Assembly: GCF_032444005.1 (NCBI RefSeq)
Contig: NC_091291.1
Coordinates: 20,398,001 to 20,462,000 of the forward strand
Length of the DNA stretch: 64,000 bases
Direction of reading: 5' to 3'
Source: Ranitomeya imitator
Taxonomy: Eukaryota
The position numbers were made by a program, and so were the translations under genes. Below, one piece after another: positions 5,726 through 64,000 of the stretch. The first letter of the stretch is position 1. Every line of letters begins with the position of its first letter. The notes beneath the pieces are model-generated. The model searched no databases. It was not told the origin of the DNA and worked only from the letters and a program-made list of their open reading frames with translations.

Positions 5726-8238
5726 GAATTGCGCCAACTCCAATCTTGTGTTTTCTTCAATCTGCATCGATTGAGATCACTGTGACATTGCTAAGGCTGA
5801 TTTTGCTCTAAAAATCCTGAAAAGTGCTGGATGCAGTCCTAGTAGACCTCCGAGTGTTGCACACATCTTTACAATTCAATTGGAAGCTTTGGAGCACTTT
5901 CTATTCGTACTGAGTAGATTTGGACAAAATTAAGTGTTTGGGGTGAAAAAATTGGAGATATTCAAGACATCCAATGATCTGTACTATATATCTTTCCCAG
6001 CATCTTATCTATATAAAAACCTACAATTGTATTTAGTGGAAGTTGTGACTGTTCTTTCTGCACCTCTTTCCATCCGCTTAGATGCTACTGTGACTATTGA
6101 CCGTGGCATCTATGGGGTAAACTGCTGGTTTCTCTGATTCTGACAGTTTCAGTCCAATAACAGCTGTATAACGCAGCCGATACTCATTGTATATAGGGCA
6201 GGTTCATGTCAGGAAGAAGTTACAATTAAATAGATGACTACTTTACTTCTACTTCATTATCTACTGAGCATCGGTCGGACTGTAAAAGTCCAGTTTCTTG
6301 GATTTACATATAAAAAGTCCACTTTTAAGCAGGGACTCAGCCTCATGCACCAGAGCAAAGCCAACATTGTGTAACAATATTACAACACATTGCAGGGCAG
6401 TGACTGATCTCGGAAGAAAATATTCCTACAGAACACAAAAACAAATGAATTGCTGATTTGTTACAACAGGTTCTCAAAAAAGGAAACTGACACATTTCCT
6501 CCGAACCCAGAAAAACAGTTTTTTTTTTTAATGTCAACATTTTATTTCCATTTAAGACTTTGATAAATATTGATCTCGGTTAGGAAAAGCGTATTAAACA
6601 CTGCCACCTAGTGGCTGCTCCATTGTACCGCAAAAAAAATCGTGTAACAGTGTATCATAAGTAGCCTGAAAAGAGAGCACGTAATGTTTCTGTCCGAGTT
6701 CAACGTACTGAGAAAGACATCTAAGCCACTGTTAAAATAAAATATTTAAAGTATCAACAATTAAAAGTAACCTTTAGAACTTCCAAATAGTCTCAATGCT
6801 TTTACAGTAAAGAATCCTTTTCTTTGAAGAGGATAAATACCTTTTTCTGAATCTGACGTTCATCTGTAGTTTTCATAGAGCTGAGATGTAAAGAAAAAAA
6901 AACATTTTGTTATCTGAGGTTTATGAAATAAGCATGTTGCCTTAACCTCTACTAAAACCATTAGCCCAACTTCCGCCTTATCTGATAATGTCACCTTGCT
7001 GTTGTTGGGTAAGATCATGATTAGCAAAATATTTCAATAGGAGACACATGTCGTATCTCCACAAGAACCTGCTCCTGCGACTTCTCCGTCTATTTCCCGG
7101 AGTTGCTATATTCACTACATAGGCGGTGCTGGTGATGGAAGACATACCGGGATAAGAAGCTATGGATGGCACAGGCTCTGTCCAACACTGAGGTTAGACC
7201 TGCAGTGCTGTCCTGTCTGACAGCATTGGTGTGTGCTCTCCAGCTGATGTTATCAGCTCCTTGCTTCAGCTAATTGGAAAGCACCACACCCTACTTAACC
7301 TTCCAGCTTCTGCTGGAAGCTGCCAGGTATAGCTTTGTGCTTCCCGGTTTAGGACTGTGTTTTCTGCTCCTGTTTAGCATTTGTGTTTTCCTGTTTTTAC
7401 CTCGGCTTTTTTTTTGTTGACATTTCTCATAAGAAACACCAATGATAGAAATGCAAGTCAATATACAATAAAACAAGATAATTTTATTAAGTGAGTAACA
7501 GCAGACAAAAAGTAACGCACAGTAGAATGAGACTTGAGAGGTAAGTTAGGAAGAAGCAGTAGAACCTGATATCTATTTAATAAAAAATCTAAGTGGTTTC
7601 TTACTCAATAATTCACAAATAATTAATATGTAACACCGAAAAAAAGAGTGGAATATAAAATATATTCAAATTCAGCAATAACAACAATTACATGATTATC
7701 ATATATAGAAGAGTAAATGACTCAATCAGGAAGTAAGGCATAAACAAATAGAAAACTTGAATAATTAAGCCACCTAAGGGGACACCCAGGCGCCCATATG
7801 TGCAAATGAGCAATGAGACATAAAAAAATATAAGCAATAGAATAATGGATACTCAATATAACAAATGTCAAAGCAGAATTAAGGCAAGTGACTAGATCCA
7901 ACACCAGACACACATTTTCACACTTGGAAAAGTATTTCCGGGGAAACGCGCGTCGCGTGCGGTGGCATCTGGTCACTTGCCTTACTCCAGCTATGATACT
8001 TGTTGAGCCTCTGACTTGCCACTCCATGTGCCCTGTTAAGAATGAAAATTCACATTCCAATGTGAATGTTTCTAATTCCGCCTCTATAAACATTGGAAAG
8101 TTAAAATGGAAAACAAAGCAAATCACTTCCTTGTAATTACATTAAAATGAATGAACAAATTGTAATTTTTACCATTGGTAATATTTTTTTTTACATTTGC
8201 AGGTTCTTTGAACTGTTCCACTCTTCACCAATGAAATA

Positions 8239-9294
8239 ATGGAAAGCAACACAACAGCATTTCCATTCTTCGATATTACAGCACTGGATGAAACTTCTGT
8301 CGATGCCACCGATTCCTCCGACGAAGAGCCTGGATTGCATATTGTGCATTATTTCTCTTTGGTGGTCTACTCTTTGGCTTTTCTACTGGGGACCTTCGGG
8401 AATGGGCTGGTCATCTGGTTCACAGTCTTCAAGATGAAGAAAACGGTCAACGTTATTTGGTTCCTTAATTTGGCGATTGCTGACTTTGTGTTCACACTAT
8501 TTCTCCCTTTGAGCATAATCTACCTGGCAAACAATTTCAACTGGCTCTTCGGAAGCTTCATGTGCAAGTTGAACAGCATGGTGGCTTTCATCAACCTGTA
8601 TGCAAGCGTCTTCCTTCTTACCTCCATCAGTATAGACCGTTGTGCCTCTGTCATCTTCCCGGTTTGGTGTCAAAACCACCGAACTCCAAGGCTGGCTTTA
8701 TTTGTTGTCATGGCTGTTTGGTTACTGGCTTTTATATTAAGCTTGCCATACTTTATAATTCGAGACACCTTCGAGGATGATGGCTTCATATTTTGTTATA
8801 ACAACTTTGAACTTGGAGCATCTAAAGACATTGGCATATCTCGACACAAAGCGACAGTCATATTGCGATTTGTTGTAGGATTTATTATTCCTTTCACCAT
8901 CGTTGTTACATGTTACTCTGTGATTGCCCTCCGGATCCAAAGAAACCACATGACCACCTCTTCCAAGCCCTTCAAAGTAATCATCGCGGTGATCATTACC
9001 TTCTTTCTTTGTTGGCTTCCTTACCATATTTTCTCGTTCCTGGAATTGCACTCAACATATCGGAAAGATGGCTATCTGCAGAACGAAGTTCGTGTTGGGA
9101 CTCCTCTAACCACCAGCCTCGCGTTCCTGAACAGCTGCGTCAATCCTTTCCTCTATGTTTTTATTGGTCGGGACTTTAAAAATAAATTTGGTAAGTCCAT
9201 CCATTCCATATTTGAAAAAGCTTTCAATGAAGACTCAATGCATAAAGACCTGAAGAGCAAAACCAAGTCTACATCTGAATCCCAAATCCTCTGA
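8239..9294 (+). CDS. cmklr1-like: Chemerin-like receptor 1-like class A GPCR (paralogue A, 351 aa, single coding exon)
   Basis: Seven hydrophobic segments; GNGLVIW, NLAIADF, WLFGSFMCK, SIDRC..FPVWCQNHR, CWLPYH and NSCVNPFLY motifs as in the CMKLR1/GPR1/FPR group; acceptor TTGCAG ends at 8202. Confidence 0.9.
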   Translation: MESNTTAFPFFDITALDETSVDATDSSDEEPGLHIVHYFSLVVYSLAFLLGTFGNGLVIWFTVFKMKKTVNVIWFLNLAIADFVFTLFLPLSIIYLANNFNWLFGSFMCKLNSMVAFINLYASVFLLTSISIDRCASVIFPVWCQNHRTPRLALFVVMAVWLLAFILSLPYFIIRDTFEDDGFIFCYNNFELGASKDIGISRHKATVILRFVVGFIIPFTIVVTCYSVIALRIQRNHMTTSSKPFKVIIAVIITFFLCWLPYHIFSFLELHSTYRKDGYLQNEVRVGTPLTTSLAFLNSCVNPFLYVFIGRDFKNKFGKSIHSIFEKAFNEDSMHKDLKSKTKSTSESQIL

Positions 9295-10152
9295 TCCATA
9301 CAGAAACCTTCACATTTGAACTTTTGGGTTTGGCTAAAGGTTCCTGTACATGTTCTTGACTGAACGAACAGTAACGTGGAGTGTTGTAGAACTAATGTTC
9401 AAAGTATTAAAACTTTGTTGTTTGGTCCTAACGCTTTGAGGACAAAAGAGTTGGAGAGACTTTTCAAAGGAAAAATTGAACTCAACCTCAAGGACATCTT
9501 GTTCAGTACACCCATTTAAAAACCATAGTCAATGGATCAAGGCAAGCTGTCCAAATAGTTGGTTATTTTCAAAAAGTGGATCATCCATTCTTCGAAAAGG
9601 GTATCCCACTGCTAAAAACCAGAGTAATGAGCTGTTATTTTTGAAAGAACCTAGCATCAACTGCTCATTTCACCTACAGCGCCCCCGCAGGACAATTGAA
9701 GTATTACACAGTGTCTTGAAAAAAGTCAGTGCATGTGTGGATGTGCTGGGTCCTCCTGGTTGTGCCTTTTAGTGCTGGCTAATTGATAAAGGTCCCAAAT
9801 AAGAACCTAAGAATGAATTCATACCAGTTACACTTCCCTGTTTGTAGAACAATTATTAAACTCTTGCAAGATATCATGATCGAGAAAACAAAGTGAGCAT
9901 TATTTTTGTTTTCCAGTATGTGACTTTTCCCCTCTCGTTTTAAACCCATAAACTTTCTTGGAACTTCTCAAGTGCCAATAGGAGAGGGAAGTTGCAAACT
10001 TTAACATAAATATTGGTCAAGTCAAATGTTGTGACATTCACTTTGTGAATTCCCTGCATAAATATTATCATGCTTGAATTATAATATGTCATCTAAATGA
10101 ATGTTTGTTTGTTTTGTAAATGATTATATAGAATGTTTTCTTCTTTAGACCA

Positions 10153-12507: not shown

Positions 12508-12999
12508 TAAGCAGATTATGGTACAGACACATTATTGAGCCCATATATTGTTTTTGCAGAGGGTCCCTATCCTGTTTGGATCCACTCCTGATGAGGTGGT
12601 CTTATATACCAATTACCCCCATAATGTGATCTAGATTTAGGCATATTCCTAAGTCATCTTGCTACTTTGACATCATATCACAATGCATCAAATGAAAGGA
12701 TCACCACCAACAGAAGATACCACCAGGGTTGGACTAGGGTGTCTGAGGTACGCAGGAGGAATTGACTTTAGGGGCCCACACTACAACTACATGCAATCAG
12801 CTGTTAGCCGTAATCAACATTATAGTGGAGCGTCGACTGCAAAATAAAGGTGGCTCCTGTGTATCTACTGTGTGAACAATATAACTGGGATATATAAATA
12901 GGTTAGTTTGCATTAAAGGGGTTCACCTACATACAAGCCTGCATGACCAGACAACATATTATCACCTCATAGTAACTGATTACAACTATTTCCTTTATT

Positions 13000-13187
13000 C
13001 CGCCATTCTGGGCCACTATGCTCCGCCATCTAGGGCCACTATGTTCCTCCATTCTGGGCCCCTATGTTCCTTTATCTAGGGCCCCTATGATCCTCCATTC
13101 TGGTTCGCTATGCTCCTCCATCCATGGCCCCTATGTACCTTATACTGTTTCCCTATGATCCCCCATCTTTGACACCTATGTTTCTTT
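13000..13187. repeat. ~21-bp minisatellite (GGCCCCTATGTTCCTCCATTCTG-like), left part; continues at 19574-19775 and 21125-21145
   Basis: The same unit flanks both sides of the Penelope palindrome and of the CR1 at 19785. Confidence 0.8.
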
Positions 13188-13263
13188 AGTCCAAAGGAAG
13201 ATGAACAGCGCTCCAGCCGGGTGTCGTGGTATCAAAAAAGGAAACTTTATTGGTCCATGTAAA

Positions 13264-13303
13264 AGCAACGTTTCGACCAGTATCCTGGTCTTTTTCAAGC
13301 ATG
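13264..13303 (-). ncRNA. Minimal type I hammerhead-like ribozyme (U3-A8 variant), left arm
   Basis: Reverse complement of the motif at 19378-19417. Confidence 0.6.
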
Positions 13304-14379
13304 TAGCACAGTACAAAGTGTCGGCTTAAATGGTGTGGATACCACACAGGGCACCAATCACCAACCAGCCACTAATTACATATACAAATACAAAAAGTAA
13401 CATCAATCAAACTATATATAATAAATTAAAATAGATACATACAATATCTGCAGCGTTAGAAACAAAGAAAATCAAATCTCAAAAGCATATAACATAATAT
13501 TGCTGCAATGTTTATATTCCGTCCAGCCAATTAGGTTCCGGTATATCCGTAGTCACGGCTACAAATTTCCAATGAAACAGTCCTTGCAGCGATCCTCCTG
13601 TCCAATCCGGATCAATTCTGCGGTGGGCGCCAAAATTCAACCAGCCTATCAAACCCCATCATGCTTCCAAGCCAGTCCCAGGTAACCAATCAGGCAAACA
13701 CTTATATCATATACCATGACTACATCACAACCCTGCGACTCACTACGGCAAGCCACCTGGCCGCAGAGGACTCAGAAGCACCCTGATAGGTGTAGCTGTG
13801 CGTCATGACAACAGCCCGCCCACCTCACGTGATCACACAACCGGGTCCGCCCCACAGTGACGCAACCAACCATCCCCCATGCACAGGGGAAGCCGCGGAT
13901 GCGCGCAGACTCAGTACCGCTGGAAACCGCCGCATCGTAAACCACGATACAGGCAGATCCAGCGGCACAGTGAGATGCCACGCCCCCCGCCAACCCACAT
14001 GCAAAGAGGACGCCGGCGCGTCACAAACAGGACGTCCCAGATGCGACGTCACAGAGTCAGCTAGCCAGATGCCAATACACAGGCGCCTATAACCATTGGA
14101 TCTGTGCAGCCACGGCCACAACGGGTTGCCAAGGGAACCTAAATAAATATAAATAGATATAATTAGCCATCTATAAGGTGTAACTCAAGATAAAACATGG
14201 AAAAAGCCATTTTGATCAAATAGATCAATAGAGTGACACTACCTAGGGACGGAAAAGGACATTGTATAATCAATCGCTAAAAACAATAAAAAACGACAAA
14301 AACACTATAAAAACAATATACCGATGAATAATGCCATAACCAAGAGGAGAGAGAACAATGAACCAGGGGAGAGAAAATA

Positions 14380-16395
14380 TTACCTAGGAATGCAGACCTG
14401 TAAATTAAAGTCTAAATTAAGGCCTCCAGGTTGTAAGGTCCCTAATGAGTAAATCCATCTAATTTCTTTCTTCCTAAGCAACGATAATCTATCCCCACCT
14501 CTCCTCAAAACCGGAACACTATCTATTACCCTAAAGCGTAATTGGTTGACAGAATGTTTATTGTCCAGAAAATGTTTGGGGATTGGCAAATCTGTAAGTC
14601 CTGTACGTATCGTGCTTTTATGCTTACTGATTCGCGCCCGCACCTCCATCGTGGTCTCCCCCACATAAGCTAACCCGCACGGGCACGTAATCATGTAAAC
14701 AACAAAGCTCGAAGAACAAGTGTAACGTTCCTTCAGATAAATCTTCTTCCCCGTATGAGGGTGATAGAAAAATTCCCCTTTAAGCATGTTGTTACAGCTG
14801 GCACACCCCAGACATGGAAAATTTCCAAGTCTGGGTGTGCTTAGAGTCGATTGGACTAGGGAGCTCTTAAATGATCCAATATCCGATCTCACCAAACTAT
14901 CACCCAGATTGCGACCCCTTCTGTATGACATCATTGGATAGTTTTTAAACGCTGGTATAGATGGTAAACCGCGCTGCAAACCCATCCAATGTTTTTTCAA
15001 AATCCTGTCAATTTGACCACTAGCTGAAGTGTATGTAGATACAAAAGGGATACGTTCCCCGGGCTGCTTCAAGGACCCTGATTTACGAGTGGACTCCCGT
15101 GATACATTCCGAGCCTTATGACTAAATCTGCAAAGCTCCTTCTTGGGATAACCCCTGTTGGAGAACTTCAGACACATTTCATCCAGCCTCCGATCAACCA
15201 CAGTGTCATCCGACACTATTCTCCGCACCCTCAAGAGTTGGCTCCATGGTAAGGAGTTAACCATTCTCCGAGGATGGTTGCTATCAAATAGCAACAGGCC
15301 ATTTCTATCGGTCTCCTTCACAAAAATGTCTGTCTTCAATTTATCTCCTTCTTTATAAACAAGGGTATCCAAAAACTGGAGCTGAGAAGTAGAAGAGGTC
15401 AAAGTAAACTGTAATTCCACGTATACTCCATTAAGATAATGGTGAAACTCATTAAGTTCTGTCACATTACCATCCCAAATCAAAAAAATATCATCAATGT
15501 AACGCCACCAGGCTCTGACGTGGCGCCAGAGGCTGGAACAGTACACAAACCTGTCCTCGAATACCGCCATATAGATGTTTGCATAAGTGGGGGCCACATT
15601 GGACCCCATGGCGGTACCCCTCAACTGTAAAAAGAACTCATCCCCAAAGAGAAAATAATTCCTCCTGAGGATGAGCTCTAACAGTGTGAGGACAAGTCGT
15701 GCACTCTCCGGGGCCACGTCAGAGCCTGATAGCGCACAAGAAACTGCGTCGAGCCCCTTGTCATGCTCGATCGACGTGTATAAAGATACAACGTCAAACG
15801 ATGCAAGCAAGGTGGTCTCAGACACAGTGATGCCTTCAAGTTTGTCAAGGAAATCATTCGTGTCACGAATGTAAGATCTAGCTGATATAGCATAGGTACG
15901 CAATACTTTATCTAAGAAAATCGCTGTCTTATTAAATAGAGAGCCCCTCCCCGACACGATAGGCCTTCCGGGGGGTTTTTCCAAATCCTTATGAATTTTC
16001 GGTAGTATATATATCACCGGTATCACTGGTGCATCAACGATCAAAAATTCTGACAACTTGTGGTCAATGAGTCCCATGGCTAGGGAGTCACTGACCACAA
16101 GTTGTAATTCCTTCTGAAAACGAGTAGTAGGATTACTTGGTAGTTTCTCATAGACACATCGATCTCCCAGTTGCCGTAAGATTTCTGCTTTGTATTTTAC
16201 GCTGTCCATAACGACAACCGCCCCGCCTTTATCGGCCTGTTTAATGGTCAACAAAGAATTATCTGCCAAGGCCCTCAAAACTTTCTTATCAGCCACTGTC
16301 ATATTACAATTGCTCGGAGGTTTAAATGTCTTTTTTAATCTATCGATATCCCTCTGAACCAATACAATATAGGATTCTACAAAATGATCCCTATT
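14380..16395 (-). CDS. 5'-truncated Penelope-like RT / GIY-YIG endonuclease ORF (left arm plus spacer)
   Basis: IKQADKGGAVVVMD, PGRPIVS, FDVVSLYTSI, GTAMGS, RYIDDIF (RT); CLGCASC linker; VVYMITCPCGLAYVGET (GIY-YIG). Frame is open, with no native start codon. Confidence 0.92.
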   Translation of the reverse strand, partial: NRDHFVESYIVLVQRDIDRLKKTFKPPSNCNMTVADKKVLRALADNSLLTIKQADKGGAVVVMDSVKYKAEILRQLGDRCVYEKLPSNPTTRFQKELQLVVSDSLAMGLIDHKLSEFLIVDAPVIPVIYILPKIHKDLEKPPGRPIVSGRGSLFNKTAIFLDKVLRTYAISARSYIRDTNDFLDKLEGITVSETTLLASFDVVSLYTSIEHDKGLDAVSCALSGSDVAPESARLVLTLLELILRRNYFLFGDEFFLQLRGTAMGSNVAPTYANIYMAVFEDRFVYCSSLWRHVRAWWRYIDDIFLIWDGNVTELNEFHHYLNGVYVELQFTLTSSTSQLQFLDTLVYKEGDKLKTDIFVKETDRNGLLLFDSNHPRRMVNSLPWSQLLRVRRIVSDDTVVDRRLDEMCLKFSNRGYPKKELCRFSHKARNVSRESTRKSGSLKQPGERIPFVSTYTSASGQIDRILKKHWMGLQRGLPSIPAFKNYPMMSYRRGRNLGDSLVRSDIGSFKSSLVQSTLSTPRLGNFPCLGCASCNNMLKGEFFYHPHTGKKIYLKERYTCSSSFVVYMITCPCGLAYVGETTMEVRARISKHKSTIRTGLTDLPIPKHFLDNKHSVNQLRFRVIDSVPVLRRGGDRLSLLRKKEIRWIYSLGTLQPGGLNLDFNLQVCIPR

Positions 16396-18301
16396 GAAAG
16401 TTTTGAGGGCCTTGGCAGATAATTCTTTGTTGACCATTAAACAGGCCGATAAAGGCGGGGCGGTTGTCGTTATGGACAGCGTAAAATACAAAGCAGAAAT
16501 CTTACGGCAACTGGGAGATCGATGTGTCTATGAGAAACTACCAAGTAATCCTACTACTCGTTTTCAGAAGGAATTACAACTTGTGGTCAGTGACTCCCTA
16601 GCCATGGGACTCATTGACCACAAGTTGTCAGAATTTTTGATCGTTGATGCACCAGTGATACCGGTGATATATATACTACCGAAAATTCATAAGGATTTGG
16701 AAAACCCCCCCGGAAGGCCTATCGTGTCGGGGAGGGGCTCTCTATTTAATAAGACAGCGATTTTCTTAGATAAAGTATTGCGTACCTATGCTATATCAGC
16801 TAGATCTTACATTCGTGACACGAATGATTTCCTTGACAAACTTGAAGGCATCACTGTGTCTGAGACCACCTTGCTTGCATCGTTTGACGTTGTATCTTTA
16901 TACACGTCGATCGAGCATGACAAGGGGCTCGACGCAGTTTCTTGTGCGCTATCAGGCTCTGACGTGGCCCCGGAGAGTGCACGACTTGTCCTCACACTGT
17001 TAGAGCTCATCCTCAGGAGGAATTATTTTCTCTTTGGGGATGAGTTCTTTTTACAGTTGAGGGGTACCGCCATGGGGTCCAATGTGGCCCCCACTTATGC
17101 AAACATCTATATGGCGGTATTCGAGGACAGGTTTGTGTACTGTTCCAGCCTCTGGCGCCACGTCAGAGCCTGGTGGCGTTACATTGATGATATTTTTTTG
17201 ATTTGGGATGGTAATGTGACAGAACTTAATGAGTTTCACCATTATCTTAATGGAGTATACGTGGAATTACAGTTTACTTTGACCTCTTCTACTTCTCAGC
17301 TCCAGTTTTTGGATACCCTTGTTTATAAAGAAGGAGATAAATTGAAGACAGACATTTTTGTGAAGGAGACCGATAGAAATGGCCTGTTGCTATTTGATAG
17401 CAACCATCCTCGGAGAATGGTTAACTCCTTACCATGGAGCCAACTCTTGAGGGTGCGGAGAATAGTGTCGGATGACACTGTGGTTGATCGGAGGCTGGAT
17501 GAAATGTGTCTGAAGTTCTCCAACAGGGGTTATCCCAAGAAGGAGCTTTGCAGATTTAGTCATAAGGCTCGGAATGTATCACGGGAGTCCACTCGTAAAT
17601 CAGGGTCCTTGAAGCAGCCCGGGGAACGTATCCCTTTTGTATCTACATACACTTCAGCTAGTGGTCAAATTGACAGGATTTTGAAAAAACATTGGATGGG
17701 TTTGCAGCGCGGTTTACCATCTATACCAGCGTTTAAAAACTATCCAATGATGTCATACAGAAGGGGTCGCAATCTGGGTGATAGTTTGGTGAGATCGGAT
17801 ATTGGATCATTTAAGAGCTCCCTAGTCCAATCGACTCTAAGCACACCCAGACTTGGAAATTTTCCATGTCTGGGGTGTGCCAGCTGTAACAACATGCTTA
17901 AAGGGGAATTTTTCTATCACCCTCATACGGGGAAGAAGATTTATCTGAAGGAACGTTACACTTGTTCTTCGAGCTTTGTTGTTTACATGATTACGTGCCC
18001 GTGCGGGTTAGCTTATGTGGGGGAGACCACGATGGAGGTGCGGGCGCGAATCAGTAAGCATAAAAGCACGATACGTACAGGACTTACAGATTTGCCAATC
18101 CTCAAACATTTTCTGGACAATAAACATTCTGTCAACCAATTACGCTTTAGGGTAATAGATAGTGTTCCGGTTTTGAGGAGAGGTGGGGATAGATTATCGT
18201 TGCTTAGGAAGAAAGAAATGAGATGGATTTACTCATTAGGGACCTTACAACCTGGAGGCCTTAATTTAGACTTTAATTTACAGGTCTGCATTCCTAGGTA
18301 A
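16396..18301 (+). CDS. 5'-truncated Penelope-like RT / GIY-YIG endonuclease ORF (right arm)
   Basis: Same motifs; differs from the left copy by three residues (K/N, P/L, I/M); starts 110 nt further into the element. Confidence 0.92.
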
Positions 18302-19377
18302 TATTTTCTCTCCCCTGGTTCATTGTTCTCTCTCCTCTTGGTTATGGCATTATTCATCGGTATATTGTTTTTATAGTGTTTTTGTCGTTTTTTATTGTTT
18401 TTAGCGATTGATTATACAATGTCCTTTTCCGTCCCTAGGTAGTGTCACTCTATTGATCTATTTGATCAAAATGGCTTTTTCCATGTTTTATCTTGAGTTA
18501 CACCTTATAGATGGCTAATTATATCTATTTATATTTATTTAGGTTCCCTTGGCAACCCGTTGTGGCCGTGGCTGCACAGATCCAATGGTTATAGGCGCCT
18601 GTGTATTGGCATCTGGCTAGCTGACTCTGTGACGTCGCATCTGGGACGTCCTGTTTGTGACGCGCCGGCGTCCTCTTTGCATGTGGGTTGGCGGGGGGCG
18701 TGGCATCTCACTGTGCCGCTGGATCTGCCTGTATCGTGGTTTACGATGCGGCGGTTTCCAGCGGTACTGAGTCTGCGCGCATCCGCGGCTTCCCCTGTGC
18801 ATGGGGGATGGTTGGTTGCGTCACTGTGGGGCGGACCCGGTTGTGTGATCACGTGAGGTGGGCGGGCTGTTGTCATGACGCACAGCTACACCTATCAGGG
18901 TGCTTCTGAGTCCTCTGCGGCCAGGTGGCTTGCCGTAGTGAGTCGCAGGGTTGTGATGTAGTCATGGTATATGATATAAGTGTTTGCCTGATTGGTTACC
19001 TGGGACTGGCTTGGAAGCATGATGGGGTTTGATAGGCTGGTTGAATTTTGGCGCCCACCGCAGAATTGATCCGGATTGGACAGGAGGATCGCTGCAAGGA
19101 CTGTTTCATTGGAAATTTGTAGCCGTGACTACGGATATGCCGGAACCTAATTGGCTGGACGGAATATAAACATTGCAGCAATATTATGTTATATGCTTTT
19201 GAGATTTGATTTTCTTTGTTTCTAACGCTGCAGATATTGTATGTATCTATTTTAATGTATTATATATAGTTTGATTGATGTTACTTTTTGTATTTGTATA
19301 TGTAATTAGTGGCTGGTTGGTGATTGGTGCCCTGTGTGGTATCCACACCATTTAAGCCGACACTTTGTACTGTGCTA

Positions 19378-19417
19378 CATGCTTGAAAAAGACCAGGATA
19401 CTGGTCGAAACGTTGCT
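19378..19417 (+). ncRNA. Minimal type I hammerhead-like ribozyme (U3-A8 variant), right arm
   Basis: GC-TTGAAAA-A-GACCAG(GATA)CTGGTC-GAAA-C-GTT-GC, followed by AATAAA at 19430-19435; perfect 6-bp stem II and palindromic AACGTT. Confidence 0.6.
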
Positions 19418-19784
19418 TTTACATGGACCAATAAAGTTTCCTTTTTTGATACCACGACACCCGGCTGGAGCGCTGTTCATCTTCCTTTGGACTATTGTAC
19501 ATATCCAGGTTGGTTCCCTGGACAAGGAACGAGCGCCCGTTTGTGTGAGTGCTGTCAGCCCGATCTTTTTTCTACCTATGTTTCTTTGTCCTTGGCTCCT
19601 ATGTTCCCTCATCCTGGGCAACCATGTTCCCCCTTCTTGGGCTCCTATGTTCCCCCATCTTGGGCCCCTATGTTCCCCCATCCTGAGCCACTATGTTCTG
19701 CTGTCCCGAGCCCCTATGTTCCTTGTCCTGGGCCCTTATATTCCTTCATTATGGGCCCCAATTTTCCTTTGCTCTGGTCTTCTT

Positions 19785-21107
19785 TCAATGAGAATAACTG
19801 TTTAACTCCATATCAGCATGGGTTTATGAGAAATCGCTCCTGTCAAACCAATCTAATCAGTTTTTATGAAGAGGTAAGCTATAGGCTGGACCACGGTGAG
19901 TCATTGGACGTGGTATATCTCGATTTTTCCAAAGCGTTTGATACCGTGCCGCACAAGAGGTTGGTGCACAAAATGAGAATGCTTGGTCTGGGGGAAATTG
20001 TGTGTAAATGGGTTAGTAACTGGCTAAGTGATAGAAAGCAGAGGGTGGTTATAAATGGTATAGTCTCTAACTGGGTCGCTGTGACCAGTGGGGTACCGCA
20101 GGGGTCAGTATTGGGACCTGTTCTCTTCAACATATTCATTAATGATCTGGTAGAAGGTTTACACAGTAAAATATCGATATTTGCAGATGATACAAAACTA
20201 TGTAAAGCAGTTAATACAAGAGAAGATAGTATTCTGCTACAGATGGATCTGGATAAGTTGGAAACTTGGGCTGAAAGGTGACAGATGAGGTTTAACAATG
20301 ATAAATGTAAGGTTATACACATGGGAAGAAGGAATCAATGTCACCATTACACACTGAATGGGAAACCACTGGGTAAATCTGACAGGGAGAAGGACTTGGG
20401 GATCCTAGTTAATGATAAACTTACCTGGAGCAGCCAGTGCCAGGCAGCAGCTGCCAAGGCAAACAGGATCATGGGGTGCATTAAAAGAGGTCTGGATACA
20501 CATGATGAGAGCATTATACTGCCTCTGTACAAATCCCTAGTTAGACCGCACATAGAGTACTGTGTCCAGTTTTGGGCACCGGTGCTCAGGAAGGATATAA
20601 TGGAACTAGAGAGAGTACAAAGGAGGGCAACAAAATTAATAAAGGGGATGGGAGAACTACAATACCCAGATAGATTAGCGAAATTAGGATTATTTAGTCT
20701 AGAAAAAAGACGACTGAGGGGCGATCTAATAACCATGTATAAGTATATAAGGGGACAATACAAATATCTCGCTGAGGATCTGTTTATACCAAGGAAGGTG
20801 ACGGGCACAAGGGGGCATTCTTTGCGTCTGGAGGAGAGAAGGTTTTTCCACCAACATAGAAGAGGATTCTTTACTGTTAGGGCAGTGAGAATCTGGAATT
20901 GCTTGCCTGAGGAGGTGGTGATGGCGAACTCAGTCGAGGGGTTCAAGAGAGGCCTGGATGTCTTCCTGGAGCAGAACAATATTGTATCATACAATTAGGT
21001 TCTGTAGAAGGACGTAGATCTGGGGATTTATTATGATGGAATATAGGCTGAACTGGATGGACAAATGTCTTTTTTCGGCCTTACTAACTATGTTACTATG
21101 TTATGTT
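19785..21107 (+). mobile_element. 5'-truncated CR1 LINE (subfamily 1) with premature stop
   Basis: RT motifs [30 protein letters not shown]; TGG>TGA at 20279-20281; (ACTATGTT)n tail; about 99% identical to 54764-56085. Confidence 0.95.
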
Positions 21108-62142: not shown

Positions 62143-62473
62143 CCCACACCAACTATGTTGTGCTAAACACACATTTCGCTTATTGCTTTAACTTTGTTCC
62201 CTATTCAAAGCAATAGGTGAAATGCACGTTGGGCGCAACATCTTTGGTGTGGGGTCTGTACCCAACGTGAGTCATTGGCTCTTTCTCTATATCTATCTAT
62301 TAATTGGTGTCCACCTTTCGATCAACAGGTTTACTATGTGCCTCTCCTTTATGAATCATTAATTTCCTTTTAGCACATATCACTTTTTTCCATACCATTA
62401 GGTTTTATTGCATATATCATGGCTACATGATTAATATTATTTACATTAATTAGATAACTTGTCTATACACATG

Positions 62474-62745
62474 AAAGGTGCTGGATTGGTATAGGTTCAC
62501 CTGAGCTGCCGTCAATAGATGATAAGAAGACAGGAATCCAAAGATCAATTGCTGTGGTTTATTGGTCAACGCGTTTCGAAGTTTCAAACTTCTTCATCAG
62601 GACAAAACCATGGTTGTCCTGACGAAGAAGTTTGAAACTTCGAAACGCGTTGACCAATAAATCACAGCAATTGATCTTTGGATTCCTGTCTTCTTATCAT
62701 CTATCAACAGCTGTCCACATGAACCCATACCATTCCAGCACCTTT
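62474..62745. mobile_element. 272-bp palindrome of two head-to-head hammerhead-bearing Penelope-type pLTR ends
   Basis: Inverted arms 62474-62604 and 62615-62745; each has core-stem II-GAAA-AACGCGTT-AATAAA pointing outward. Confidence 0.8.
62616..62654 (+). ncRNA. Minimal type I hammerhead ribozyme (mirror copy with CTGATGA core at ~62565-62603 on the minus strand)
   Basis: GTC-CTGACGA-A-GAAGTT(TGA)AACTTC-GAAA-CGC-GTT-GAC: canonical core, stem II, GUU cleavage triplet and GTC/GAC stem I. Confidence 0.8.
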
Positions 62746-63200
62746 GATTCTTTCCTCGTTGGTCTGCAGGAGCCTAAGCCTCTTTCAGTGGTTGTGTGCA
62801 CTCAACCCTATCAGGTGACCACGATAATGCGTATTCTTCCCCAGATAAGACTATTGCTTGTCCAGGTTTATTCCTTTTCTGTCTATACACTAATTTCCTT
62901 TTTGCCCCTTTTATTGATCAATAGGTTCACTATGTTGACATTATTTATGGCTGCTATTTTATCTTCTTGTAGCACATGTCATTTTATACCTACACTAATT
63001 TTAAATGAACTAAGTAGCATCATGGCTACTTGATTAATACCATTTTTTTTGTCATACTTCAATTATAGTTCTGTTTATAACTATTGTTTCTAGCATAGTC
63101 ACTTTAGTAACCTGTCTATATATATGGACATATTCATTCAATAACATATTATTTCTTTAGTACTTTATTAAATTGCTTCACGACTCTTTGGTATGTTACT

Positions 63201-64000
63201 TGTGTGGTGCAGTAACCCACGTTACAGCCAGGGGGCGCTGTGTGTGCGCTTCAAGATGTGCTTGGAGGCATAAATGTGATGAGACAAAGACCGGCAGAAG
63301 TGTAAATGGCCGGTGTGTGTGTTGCAGAGGAAGACACGCTGCGCTGTCAGTCTGAAGTTAAGTTGGTGTGCTGGGACCTGTAGTCCCACAAGTAATTGTG
63401 TAATTCTAATGGGAGACTGGCAGGGCTAGTTATGAGAGATGGGAGAGTCAAACTAGCCACACACACCCACACTCCCACCCAGGGGAGTGGTTACACCTAG
63501 ATAATGTGACCAGAGTGTGGGTCACATTGAGGGGGTTGGGTTCAGAGTGTATGGATCCGTTTGGTGCATGTGCAAGGTCCTGGATGGTCGGTGTTGGAGT
63601 CTCCTGGCATTGGAGAAGTCCTGGAAGCACTGAAGAGTGAGTCCTGCAATAGCCGAGGTGTTGGATTGTCCTGAAGTGGGCTGGAGTCCTGGAAGCACTA
63701 CTAAAGCTATGGACTGAGTGCTCGAGGTGTTGGATTGTCCTGGTATGGACTGGAGTCCTGCAAGCACCTGGTAAGAGTGAGTCCTGCAATAGCCGAGGTG
63801 TTGGATTGTTCTGAAGTGGGCTGGAGTTCTGGAAGCACTGCTGAGGCTATGGACTGAATGCTCGAGGTGTTGAATTGTCCTGGTATGGACTGGAGTCCTG
63901 CAAGCACCTGGTAAGAGTGTGAGCCCTGGAATGGTCAGGGTGTTGGATTGTCCTGGGATGGATTGGAGTCCTGCAAGCACCTGGTAAGATCATGGACTGA
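63201..64000. repeat. LTR-like repeat containing a ~70/140-bp tandem array, cut by the window end
   Basis: Starts with TG; GAGTCCTGCAATAGCCGAGGTGTTGGATTGT recurs at 63639 and 63779 with half-units between. The other end is not visible. Confidence 0.4.

What the first reader, a model, noticed from the sequence alone, without database searches (positions are those of the whole stretch)
13174..19587. 6.4-kb near-perfect palindrome: two Penelope-like RT-GIY-YIG copies fused head-to-head inside one target-site duplication
Seen: arms 13187-16285 and 16396-19494 are exactly 3099 bp each, and I found only five single-base differences (three missense, two non-coding). 3' ends point outward, both frames are open, a 14-bp direct repeat ACCTATGTTTCTTT brackets the whole structure, and the host minisatellite continues on both sides. 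Known: Penelope-like elements often carry short inverted or partial-tandem pLTRs, and a CxxCxxC linker marks the Neptune clade. Inferred: a very recent single integration event that duplicated nearly the whole coding element in inverted form, much larger than the usual inverted pLTR. With the miniature at 62474 this hints at a systematic palindromic integration mode.
Basis: partly seen in the sequence, partly recalled or inferred. Interest (0 to 1): 0.9.

Follow-up and report, generated by a model that had tools for sequence, protein, structure and literature searches.

The report
Head-to-head Penelope-like retrotransposon insertion, frog
This 6.4-kb near-perfect palindrome is real, but it is one young insertion of a Penelope-like jumping gene laid down as two mirror-image, front-truncated copies, a layout already described as typical for this class of element, so it is a clean example rather than a discovery.

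Summary
The arms 13187-16285 and 16396-19494 are 3099 nt each and differ at five bases (three missense, two non-coding). They are separated by 110 nt and bracketed by an exact 14-mer in a 23-bp minisatellite. The structure is not symmetric, though.

- **Spacer:** the 110-nt "spacer" is coding sequence of the left (minus-strand) copy.
- **Tail:** 79 nt (19495-19573) lie between the right arm and the target-site duplication (TSD). Contigs from other runs show this stretch belongs to the element family.
- **Private sequence:** each copy therefore carries element sequence that the other lacks.
- **Truncation:** both copies start at about residues 231 and 269 of an 898-aa relative. This is not "nearly the whole coding element".

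Inverted 5'-truncated copies with a one-sided tail inside one TSD, often in simple repeats, are published hallmarks of Penelope-like elements (PLEs) (PMC8557442, PMC3846280). In vitro, an Anolis PLE nicks and extends both DNA strands from two internal start sites, which explains the tail (PMC11167929).

The most likely origin is one integration event primed from both target strands. Simple cDNA snap-back fits poorly. An assembly artefact is very unlikely on internal evidence, although no public read data confirmed the central junction.

This scan already noted several such dimers elsewhere in the same genome. Interest is low.

The parts
12998..13173 (.). Host 23-bp minisatellite, left flank
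   Evidence: TRF period 23; units listed
13174..13187 (.). Left copy of the target-site duplication ACCTATGTTTCTTT. Its last T is ambiguous with the first base of the element.
13187..16395 (-). Left PLE copy on the minus strand, 3209 nt. Its 3' end is outward at 13187/13188 and lacks the tail. It is 5'-truncated at about aa 231 of an 898-aa relative.
13187..14379 (-). 3' untranslated / pseudo-LTR-type region of the left copy, 1.19 kb. It holds two of the five arm differences.
14380..16395 (-). RT-linker-GIY-YIG reading frame of the left copy, 671 codons plus the stop. It has no native start codon.
16286..16395 (-). The 'spacer'. It is a private 110-nt 5' extension of the left copy, in frame, and aligns to residues 233-270 of homologue P0004.
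   Evidence: A run X1 contig at family-level depth covers 16258-16396 and then diverges.
16395..16396 (.). Head-to-head junction of the two 5' ends. It is blunt, with no microhomology and no local palindrome.
16396..19573 (+). Right PLE copy on the plus strand, 3178 nt. It is 5'-truncated at about aa 269 of the relative. Its 3' end carries the tail.
16396..18301 (+). RT-linker-GIY-YIG reading frame of the right copy, ending at the same stop as the left copy.
18302..19494 (+). 3' untranslated / pseudo-LTR-type region of the right copy. It has a GC- and CpG-rich core at about 18600-18900 and no canonical hammerhead ribozyme.
19495..19573 (+). One-sided 79-nt 'tail'. It is element sequence present only at the right end.
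   Evidence: Contigs of other copies end at 19493 (run X13, then an ACAG microsatellite) and at about 19576 (run X3, another organism label).
19574..19587 (.). Right copy of the target-site duplication
19588..19767 (.). Host 23-bp minisatellite, right flank, followed by an old LINE reverse-transcriptase fragment

Best explanation
This is one young retrotransposition event of a Neptune-type Penelope-like element (PLE) in a dendrobatid-like frog genome. It took the head-to-head layout that is characteristic of PLEs: TSD, inverted 5'-truncated copy without tail, direct 5'-truncated copy with a one-sided tail, TSD.

Most likely mechanism:
1. The element's GIY-YIG endonuclease nicked both strands of a minisatellite unit about 14 bp apart.
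2. Each exposed 3'-OH primed reverse transcription of element RNA. Either two RNAs were used, or one RNA was copied twice with strand displacement.
3. The right-hand primer started at the distal internal start site, which gives the 79-nt tail. The left-hand primer started at the proximal site 79 nt upstream, which gives no tail.
4. Both cDNAs stopped early, 110 nt apart, inside the N-terminal third of the RT frame.
5. Their 3' ends were joined without microhomology, by a template jump onto the other cDNA or by end joining. Each cDNA then served as template for the other's second strand.

Shown here: the anatomy, the TSD, the private sequence in each arm, and use of the same two 3' termini by other copies. 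Inferred: priming from both strands, and the way the two cDNAs were joined.

Both copies lack the N-terminal part of the protein and any start codon, so they are dead on arrival.
For: - **Geometry:** the arm coordinates, the five mismatches and the non-palindromic flanks are confirmed.
- **True TSD:** the exact 14-mer carries a unit-specific variant, and the 23-bp phase is restored when the insert and one 14-mer are removed.
- **Spacer is element sequence:** it is in frame and collinear with residues 233-270 of P0004. The overall identity to P0004 is 60% over 667 aa. A contig at family-level depth (136) covers 16258-16396 and then diverges.
- **Tail is element sequence:** a run X13 contig from another copy ends at 19493 and continues into (ACAG)n, which is the tail-less terminus of the left arm. 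A run X3 contig ends at about 19576, the tailed terminus.
- **PLE identity:**
  - It has a YIDD RT motif and a weak RVT_1 hit.
  - It has E=0 relatives in frogs.
  - Its C-terminus is collinear with homologues whose domain passes the Pfam GIY-YIG threshold.
  - The linker cysteines C-x2-C-x2-C are invariant in that alignment.
- **Literature:**
  - An inverted 5'-truncated copy with a one-sided tail, and a bias for simple repeats, are published PLE features (PMC8557442).
  - Head-to-head is the most frequent arrangement, with an optional tail on one inverted repeat and a single TSD (PMC3846280).
  - Anolis PAc cleaves and extends both strands, is predicted to be a dimer, and starts RT at two adjacent internal sites that delimit the tail (PMC11167929).
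- **Recurrence:** earlier notes of this scan list several head-to-head PLE dimers in the same genome. These are leads only and were not checked here.
Against: - No read or contig was shown to bridge the central junction or both flanks.
  - Only short Logan contigs were available.
  - A run search with a 60-nt probe centred on the junction listed none (only 3 sampled words, so this is weak).
- The tail is 79 nt, against the 30-40 nt quoted in the literature.
- No canonical hammerhead ribozyme was found.
- Five differences in 3099 nt are more than typical RT error would give if both arms were made at once. They probably arose after insertion or reflect two slightly different template RNAs. None is a CpG transition.
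- Two-strand priming has been shown only in vitro, for a Poseidon-clade element and not for this family.
Confidence: 0.8

Rival explanations
1. cDNA snap-back (hairpin self-priming). A single first-strand cDNA folded back on itself and was copied, so that one arm is a copy of the other.
For: The arms are 99.84% identical. Self-priming has been proposed for PLE inverted repeats (PMC3846280).
Against: Each arm has element sequence the other lacks. The left has the 110-nt 5' extension and the right has the 79-nt tail, so neither arm can be the sole template of the other. There is no complementarity or microhomology at the junction, whereas the published self-priming argument rests on palindromes at the junction. 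Copying the left arm to its end would run into the reverse complement of the left flank, which is not seen.
Confidence: 0.08
2. Two independent insertions. A second copy of the same family landed in inverted orientation exactly at the 5' end of an earlier one.
For: The five differences could come from two different source RNAs. PLEs are abundant in this genome.
Against: One 14-bp TSD brackets the whole structure and neither copy has a TSD of its own. Exact abutment of two 5' ends that lie only 110 nt apart in element coordinates would be a coincidence. The same layout recurs in the genome and in the literature as a single-event product.
Confidence: 0.04
3. Assembly artefact, either a fold-back chimeric read or a mis-join of two loci.
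For: Palindromes are a known failure mode of long-read assembly. No public run was listed for the junction words, and no contig bridging the junction was shown.
Against: The flanks are not reverse complements of each other. They form one minisatellite in phase, with an exact TSD. The arms differ at five sites, and each ends at a terminus that the family uses elsewhere. A fold-back chimera would be symmetric out to its ends.
Confidence: 0.03
4. DNA-level inverted duplication after an ordinary single-copy insertion, by replication template switching or hairpin-capped break repair.
For: Such processes make near-perfect palindromes with short spacers.
Against: It would not place the tail-less family terminus exactly against the TSD on the left while keeping the tailed terminus on the right. 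It also does not explain why the layout recurs for this element class.
Confidence: 0.03

Closest known systems
Canonical EN+ Penelope-like element insertions (Penelope of Drosophila virilis; Pen2a_Av of Adineta vaga; Neptune/Poseidon of fish and amphibians)
   Same: They share an RT with a C-terminal GIY-YIG endonuclease and strong 5' truncation. An inverted 5'-truncated copy sits head-to-head with the direct copy. An optional tail is present at one end only, and a single TSD brackets the whole unit. Insertion into simple repeats is also shared (PMC8557442, PMC3846280).
   Different: - There is no upstream direct pseudo-LTR or partial tandem here. The structure is only two truncated copies.
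- The arms are long (3.1 kb) because truncation occurred late.
- The tail is 79 nt rather than 30-40 nt.
- No canonical hammerhead motif was found in the retained 1.27-kb 3' region.
PAc (Poseidon of Anolis carolinensis) in vitro system, PMC11167929
   Same: It gives the mechanistic model used here. PAc nicks and extends both target strands, is predicted to be a dimer, and starts RT at two adjacent internal sites whose interval equals the genomic tail. The two 3' termini seen here (19493/4 and about 19573) behave like such a pair.
   Different: It belongs to a different clade, Penelope/Poseidon, which lacks the Zn-finger-like linker. The interval between its start sites is shorter. No biochemistry exists for the frog family. 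The idea that the terminus lies 116 nt into a downstream ORF, as in PAc, was not supported by homology.
LINE-1 twin priming (5' inversions), cited from general knowledge
   Same: The second target strand primes reverse transcription, which produces an inverted segment inside one TSD.
   Different: Twin priming uses two different parts of one RNA, so the inverted and direct segments do not overlap. Here the arms duplicate the same 3099 nt.
Non-LTR retrozymes, the non-autonomous hammerhead-bearing partners of PLEs (bioRxiv 10.64898/2026.07.22.740005)
   Same: This is relevant only to the miniature at 62471-62879. That insertion is small and non-coding, has a PLE-style inverted arm, a one-sided extension and a TSD, and carries a CTGATGA-stem-GAAAC motif.
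   Different: No Rfam hammerhead model matches it even at E<=10. It is not tandem. It has no significant similarity to the large element.

Membership tests
Penelope-like elements (EN+) | Reverse transcriptase domain | tested here: met
   The YIDD motif is present. The RVT_1 hit is weak (21.5 bits, below the 29.6 cut-off). Close frog relatives (E=0 to 1e-170) carry RVT_1 above the threshold.
Penelope-like elements (EN+) | C-terminal GIY-YIG endonuclease fused to the RT in one frame | tested here: met
   Pfam gives no direct hit on the window protein itself. The C-terminus aligns without gaps to P0007, P0014, P0024 and P0114, whose equivalent segment passes the PF01541 gathering score. The Y, G, R and H positions and the C-P-C are invariant in that alignment.
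Penelope-like elements (EN+) | Insertion layout: tandem and/or inverted 5'-truncated copies, one-sided tail, single TSD | tested here: met
   compared with PMC8557442 and PMC3846280
Penelope-like elements (EN+) | Hammerhead ribozyme in the pseudo-LTR (typical, not universal) | tested here: not met
   No Rfam hit at gathering score or at E<=10. There is no CTGANGA...GAAA motif on either strand. Only a hairpin followed by GAAAC is seen at about 19391-19411, and its 5' core is degenerate. Naiad and Chlamys PLEs also lack hammerheads, so this does not exclude membership.
Neptune clade of PLEs | CX2-5CxxC Zn-finger-like linker between RT and EN (shared with Nematis) | tested here: met
   The sequence is PCLGCASC, and C43, C46 and C49 are invariant in alignment A1. 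The definition is taken from PMC8557442.
Neptune clade of PLEs | Phylogenetic placement of the RT with reference Neptune elements | not tested
   No curated reference PLE sequences were available in the tools. The clade is also reported as paraphyletic.
LINE-type twin-priming inversion | Inverted and direct segments derive from different, non-overlapping parts of one RNA | tested here: not met
   The arms duplicate the same 3099 nt.
Fold-back assembly artefact | Symmetry continues into the flanks, with no TSD | tested here: not met
   There is no complementarity outward of the arms. The flanks are one in-phase minisatellite with an exact 14-bp TSD.

The most novel reading that the evidence does not exclude
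Each arm carries private element sequence at opposite ends: a 5' extension on the tail-less copy and a tail on the shorter copy. The junction is blunt and non-palindromic. This insertion could therefore be natural in vivo evidence that PLE head-to-head structures arise from two independent target-primed reverse transcriptions by a dimeric RNP, one on each DNA strand and each choosing one of two internal start sites. That would argue against the self-priming model proposed earlier. A genome-wide table in this PLE-rich frog could settle the question.
Probability: 0.3. Interest if true: 0.4.

Novelty: new member of a known kind. Interest (0 to 1): 0.2.

Why it matters
The finding mostly matters as a correction. 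A striking 6.4-kb palindrome that looks exceptional is the standard footprint of Penelope-like retrotransposition, and this frog genome holds many such structures.

Its modest value is as a very young, cleanly resolved example. The two arms have different ends, and that argues for two separate priming events, which fits recent in vitro work on an Anolis element. Together with the other young dimers in this genome, it could be used to test how PLEs build inverted structures. That mechanism is still unresolved.

Tried and rejected
1. **Hammerhead ribozyme.** Rfam was run on the whole window at gathering score and on 16286-19700 and 62300-63000 at E<=10. No hammerhead was found, only chance miRNA-like hairpins. 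A regex for the core motif in the element found none.
2. **Other copies in the window.** blastn of both copies and tblastn of five PLE proteins against the window found nothing outside the palindrome.
3. **ORF start in the 3' end, as in PAc.**
   - An ATG at 19379 lies 116 nt before the tail-less terminus, and its frame stays open through the tail.
   - An exhaustive HMMER search with the 65-aa peptide hit only giant repetitive proteins.
   - The N-termini of full-length relatives do not match the region.
   - The idea is unsupported.
4. **DNA of the closest relative.** The Ranitomeya imitator locus for P0001 was sought, but no DNA was served.
5. **Read support.**
   - Only short Logan contigs were available, and none of the pieces shown bridges the central junction.
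   - A 60-nt junction probe listed no run.
   - This shows neither presence nor absence.
6. **Miniature versus the large element.** The best local alignment scores 25, against a shuffle mean of 18.6 and a shuffle maximum of 28, so it is not significant. It does fall on the arm-end/tail-start motif of the large element.
7. **Pfam GIY-YIG on the window protein.** There was no direct hit. The domain was established through homologues instead.
8. **CpG decay.** None of the five arm differences is a CpG transition.

Full report
**Observation**

The repeat finder reports one inverted pair, 13187-16285 and 16396-19494. Each arm is 3099 nt and the arms are 110 nt apart. A base-by-base comparison gives exactly five mismatches, at 13424/19257, 13542/19139, 14461/18220, 14579/18102 and 15976/16705. 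It shows no complementarity past the arms, either outward into the flanks or inward into the spacer.

The 14-mer ACCTATGTTTCTTT is found at 13174-13187 and 19574-19587. Both arms hold the same open frame ending at the same stop (14380 on the minus strand, 18301 on the plus strand). The 3' ends face outward. The two translations differ at three residues, and the other two differences lie downstream of the stop.

**Is the 14-mer a real target-site duplication?**

The flanks are a 23-bp minisatellite, so a repeat of a 14-mer could be trivial. It is not.

- The units are only 60-80% alike.
- The variant TGTTTCTTT occurs only in these two places.
- Removing the insert plus one 14-mer gives a complete 23-bp unit, CCTATGTTTCTTTGTCCTTGGCT, with the array phase kept exactly.

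The last T of the left 14-mer could also be the first base of the element, so the TSD is 13-14 bp.

**The structure is not a true palindrome**

Two features break the symmetry.

First, the 110-nt spacer read on the minus strand continues the left copy's frame. It aligns collinearly with residues 233-270 of a full-length frog relative, P0004 (898 aa). The whole 671-aa translation is 60% identical to P0004 with one gap. In a public run of the same organism label, a contig at family-level depth (136) covers 16258-16396. That span is the end of the left arm plus the whole spacer. The contig then diverges, as expected if other copies simply continue 5'-ward.

Second, 79 nt (19495-19573) lie between the right arm and the right TSD. 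This stretch is element sequence, and contigs of other copies show two alternative ends:

- A run X13 contig matches up to 19493 and then runs into an (ACAG)n microsatellite. This is exactly where the left arm ends.
- A run X3 contig, from another organism label, matches to about 19576.

The left copy is therefore 16395→13187 on the minus strand, with no tail and reaching 110 nt further 5'. The right copy is 16396→19573 on the plus strand, with a tail and shorter at its 5' end. Each has element sequence the other lacks.

**What the element is**

- **RT:** the frame has a YIDD reverse-transcriptase core and a weak RVT_1 hit.
- **Relatives:** the best relatives are unnamed proteins of poison frogs, Ranitomeya imitator at 76%, followed by many other anurans.
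- **Endonuclease:**
  - Pfam does not detect GIY-YIG on the window protein itself.
  - The C-terminal 186 aa align without gaps to four relatives whose equivalent segment passes the PF01541 threshold.
  - The conserved Y, G, R and H positions and the C-P-C are invariant in that alignment.
- **Linker:** upstream of the endonuclease lies PCLGCASC. This is the CX2-5CxxC linker that marks the Neptune and Nematis clades (PMC8557442).

It is therefore an EN+ Penelope-like element of Neptune type. Clade placement by phylogeny was not tested.

Both copies start at about residues 231 and 269 of the 898-aa relative and have no native start codon. They are 5'-truncated, dead-on-arrival copies and not nearly complete elements.

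The 1.27-kb region after the stop has no canonical hammerhead ribozyme.

**Comparison with what is known**

- **Craig et al. 2021.**
  - PLE insertions are highly 5'-truncated.
[quoted passage not shown] - PLEs favour microsatellites (PMC8557442).
- **Arkhipova et al. 2013.** They describe inverted pseudo-LTRs with an optional tail on one of them inside a single TSD, and call head-to-head 'the most frequently observed' arrangement (PMC3846280).
- **Frangieh et al. 2024.** Purified Anolis PAc cleaves and extends both strands of the target. It is predicted to be a dimer. It starts reverse transcription at two adjacent internal sites, and the interval between them is the genomic tail (PMC11167929).

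Every feature here fits that picture. The only quantitative departures are the long arms, which reflect late truncation, and a 79-nt tail.

Earlier notes of this same scan list head-to-head PLE dimers of 6.9-16.3 kb elsewhere in this genome. Follow-ups on two of them (9.5 and 11.5 kb) filed them as the known architecture. I did not re-check those windows.

**Mechanism**

The strand logic is simple. In the right copy the minus strand is antisense, as expected for a cDNA primed from the bottom-strand nick at the right. In the left copy the plus strand is antisense, as expected for a cDNA primed from the top-strand nick at the left.

The right-hand synthesis began at the distal start site (tail). 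The left-hand synthesis began at the proximal one (no tail). They stopped 110 nt apart and were joined bluntly.

A single cDNA that snapped back on itself cannot give this product, for three reasons.

- If the left arm were the template, the copy could not acquire the tail and would run into the reverse complement of the left flank.
- If the right arm were the template, the copy could not acquire the 110-nt extension.
- The junction has no palindrome or microhomology.

I therefore favour priming on both strands (about 0.55-0.6) within the overall reading of a single PLE integration event (about 0.9).

The five differences (0.16%) are too many for ordinary RT error in a single event. They probably arose after insertion or come from two slightly different template RNAs. 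None is a CpG transition.

**Artefact?**

Independent read support could not be obtained. Only short contigs were served, and no piece shown bridges 16395/16396. A junction-centred 60-nt probe listed no run, but only 3 words were sampled, so this is weak.

Internal evidence is strong all the same. The flanks are non-palindromic and in phase, the TSD is exact, the arms differ at five sites, and both termini match family termini seen elsewhere. A fold-back chimera or a mis-join would not produce this combination.

**The miniature**

At 62471-62879 there is a 409-bp non-coding insertion.

- **Layout:** it has 135-nt inverted arms (about 90% alike), an 8-nt spacer and a 131-nt one-sided extension on the right.
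- **TSD:** an 11-bp TSD (TGTCTATACAC) lies at 62460 and 62880. The TSD is not explained by the 68% similarity of its two flanks.
- **Ribozyme-like motif:** near its centre, the minus strand of the left arm carries CTGATGA followed by a 6-bp stem and GAAAC. The plus strand of the right arm carries the variant CTGACGA. No Rfam hammerhead model matches.
- **Relation to the large element:** it has no significant similarity to the large element.

It has the same layout and is plausibly a PLE-mobilised, retrozyme-like passenger. It adds nothing new to the main reading.

**Verdict**

The finding is real, young and very clean, but it is an ordinary example of a documented insertion style. Its novelty is that of a new member of a known kind, and its interest is low.

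Noticed in passing
window 62460-62890: A 409-bp non-coding insertion with an 11-bp TSD, 135-nt inverted arms (about 90% alike), an 8-nt spacer and a 131-nt one-sided extension. A CTGA(T/C)GA-stem-GAAAC motif lies near the centre on each arm. No Rfam hammerhead model matches. It has the PLE-style layout and may be a retrozyme-like passenger.
   Followed up: partly
window 16576-16628 (+), mirrored at 16053-16105: A 53-nt near-perfect hairpin (23-bp stem, 7-nt loop) lies inside the RT coding frame. Its free energy is -36.5 kcal/mol and its z-score is -7.35 against shuffles. This is far beyond chance for coding sequence. Its function is unknown.
   Followed up: partly
window 15503-15531 / 15706-15734 (mirrored at 16947-16975 / 17150-17178): A 29-nt inverted repeat pair (86% complementary, with a 16-nt perfect core) lies 174 nt apart within the RT core coding region. 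Contig word depth in run X1 spikes to about 7,000-10,000 in exactly these bins. This segment seems to be shared by very many elements in the genome.
   Followed up: no
window 19379-19573: An ATG at 19379 opens a frame that runs through the 79-nt tail. The tail-less terminus lies 116 nt after it, which resembles the 111-118 nt reported for Anolis PAc. Next to the ATG, a hairpin GACCAG-GATA-CTGGTC followed by GAAAC looks like a decayed hammerhead. Homology searches gave no support.
   Followed up: yes
window 18372-19483: A cDNA-type contig in run X13 begins at 18372 directly after a SMART template-switch oligo sequence and runs to 19483 with nine differences. The family's 3' region appears to be transcribed from a start about 70 nt after the stop codon. 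That is compatible with a pseudo-LTR promoter near the GC/CpG-rich segment at 18600-18900.
   Followed up: no
window 19790-20281: An old LINE reverse-transcriptase fragment (RVT_1, 83.7 bits) lies directly after the minisatellite. One mechanical frame stays open from the PLE tail through the minisatellite into this RT, probably by chance.
   Followed up: partly
Ranitomeya imitator contig of P0001 (no DNA served): The closest relative (76% identity) has a second PLE-type gene (HTH_animal domain) on the opposite strand 2.5 kb upstream. This divergent pair suggests the same head-to-head layout in another poison frog.
   Followed up: no
window 63590-64000: A satellite with a 140-bp period (69-bp sub-period) runs off the end of the window.
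   Followed up: no
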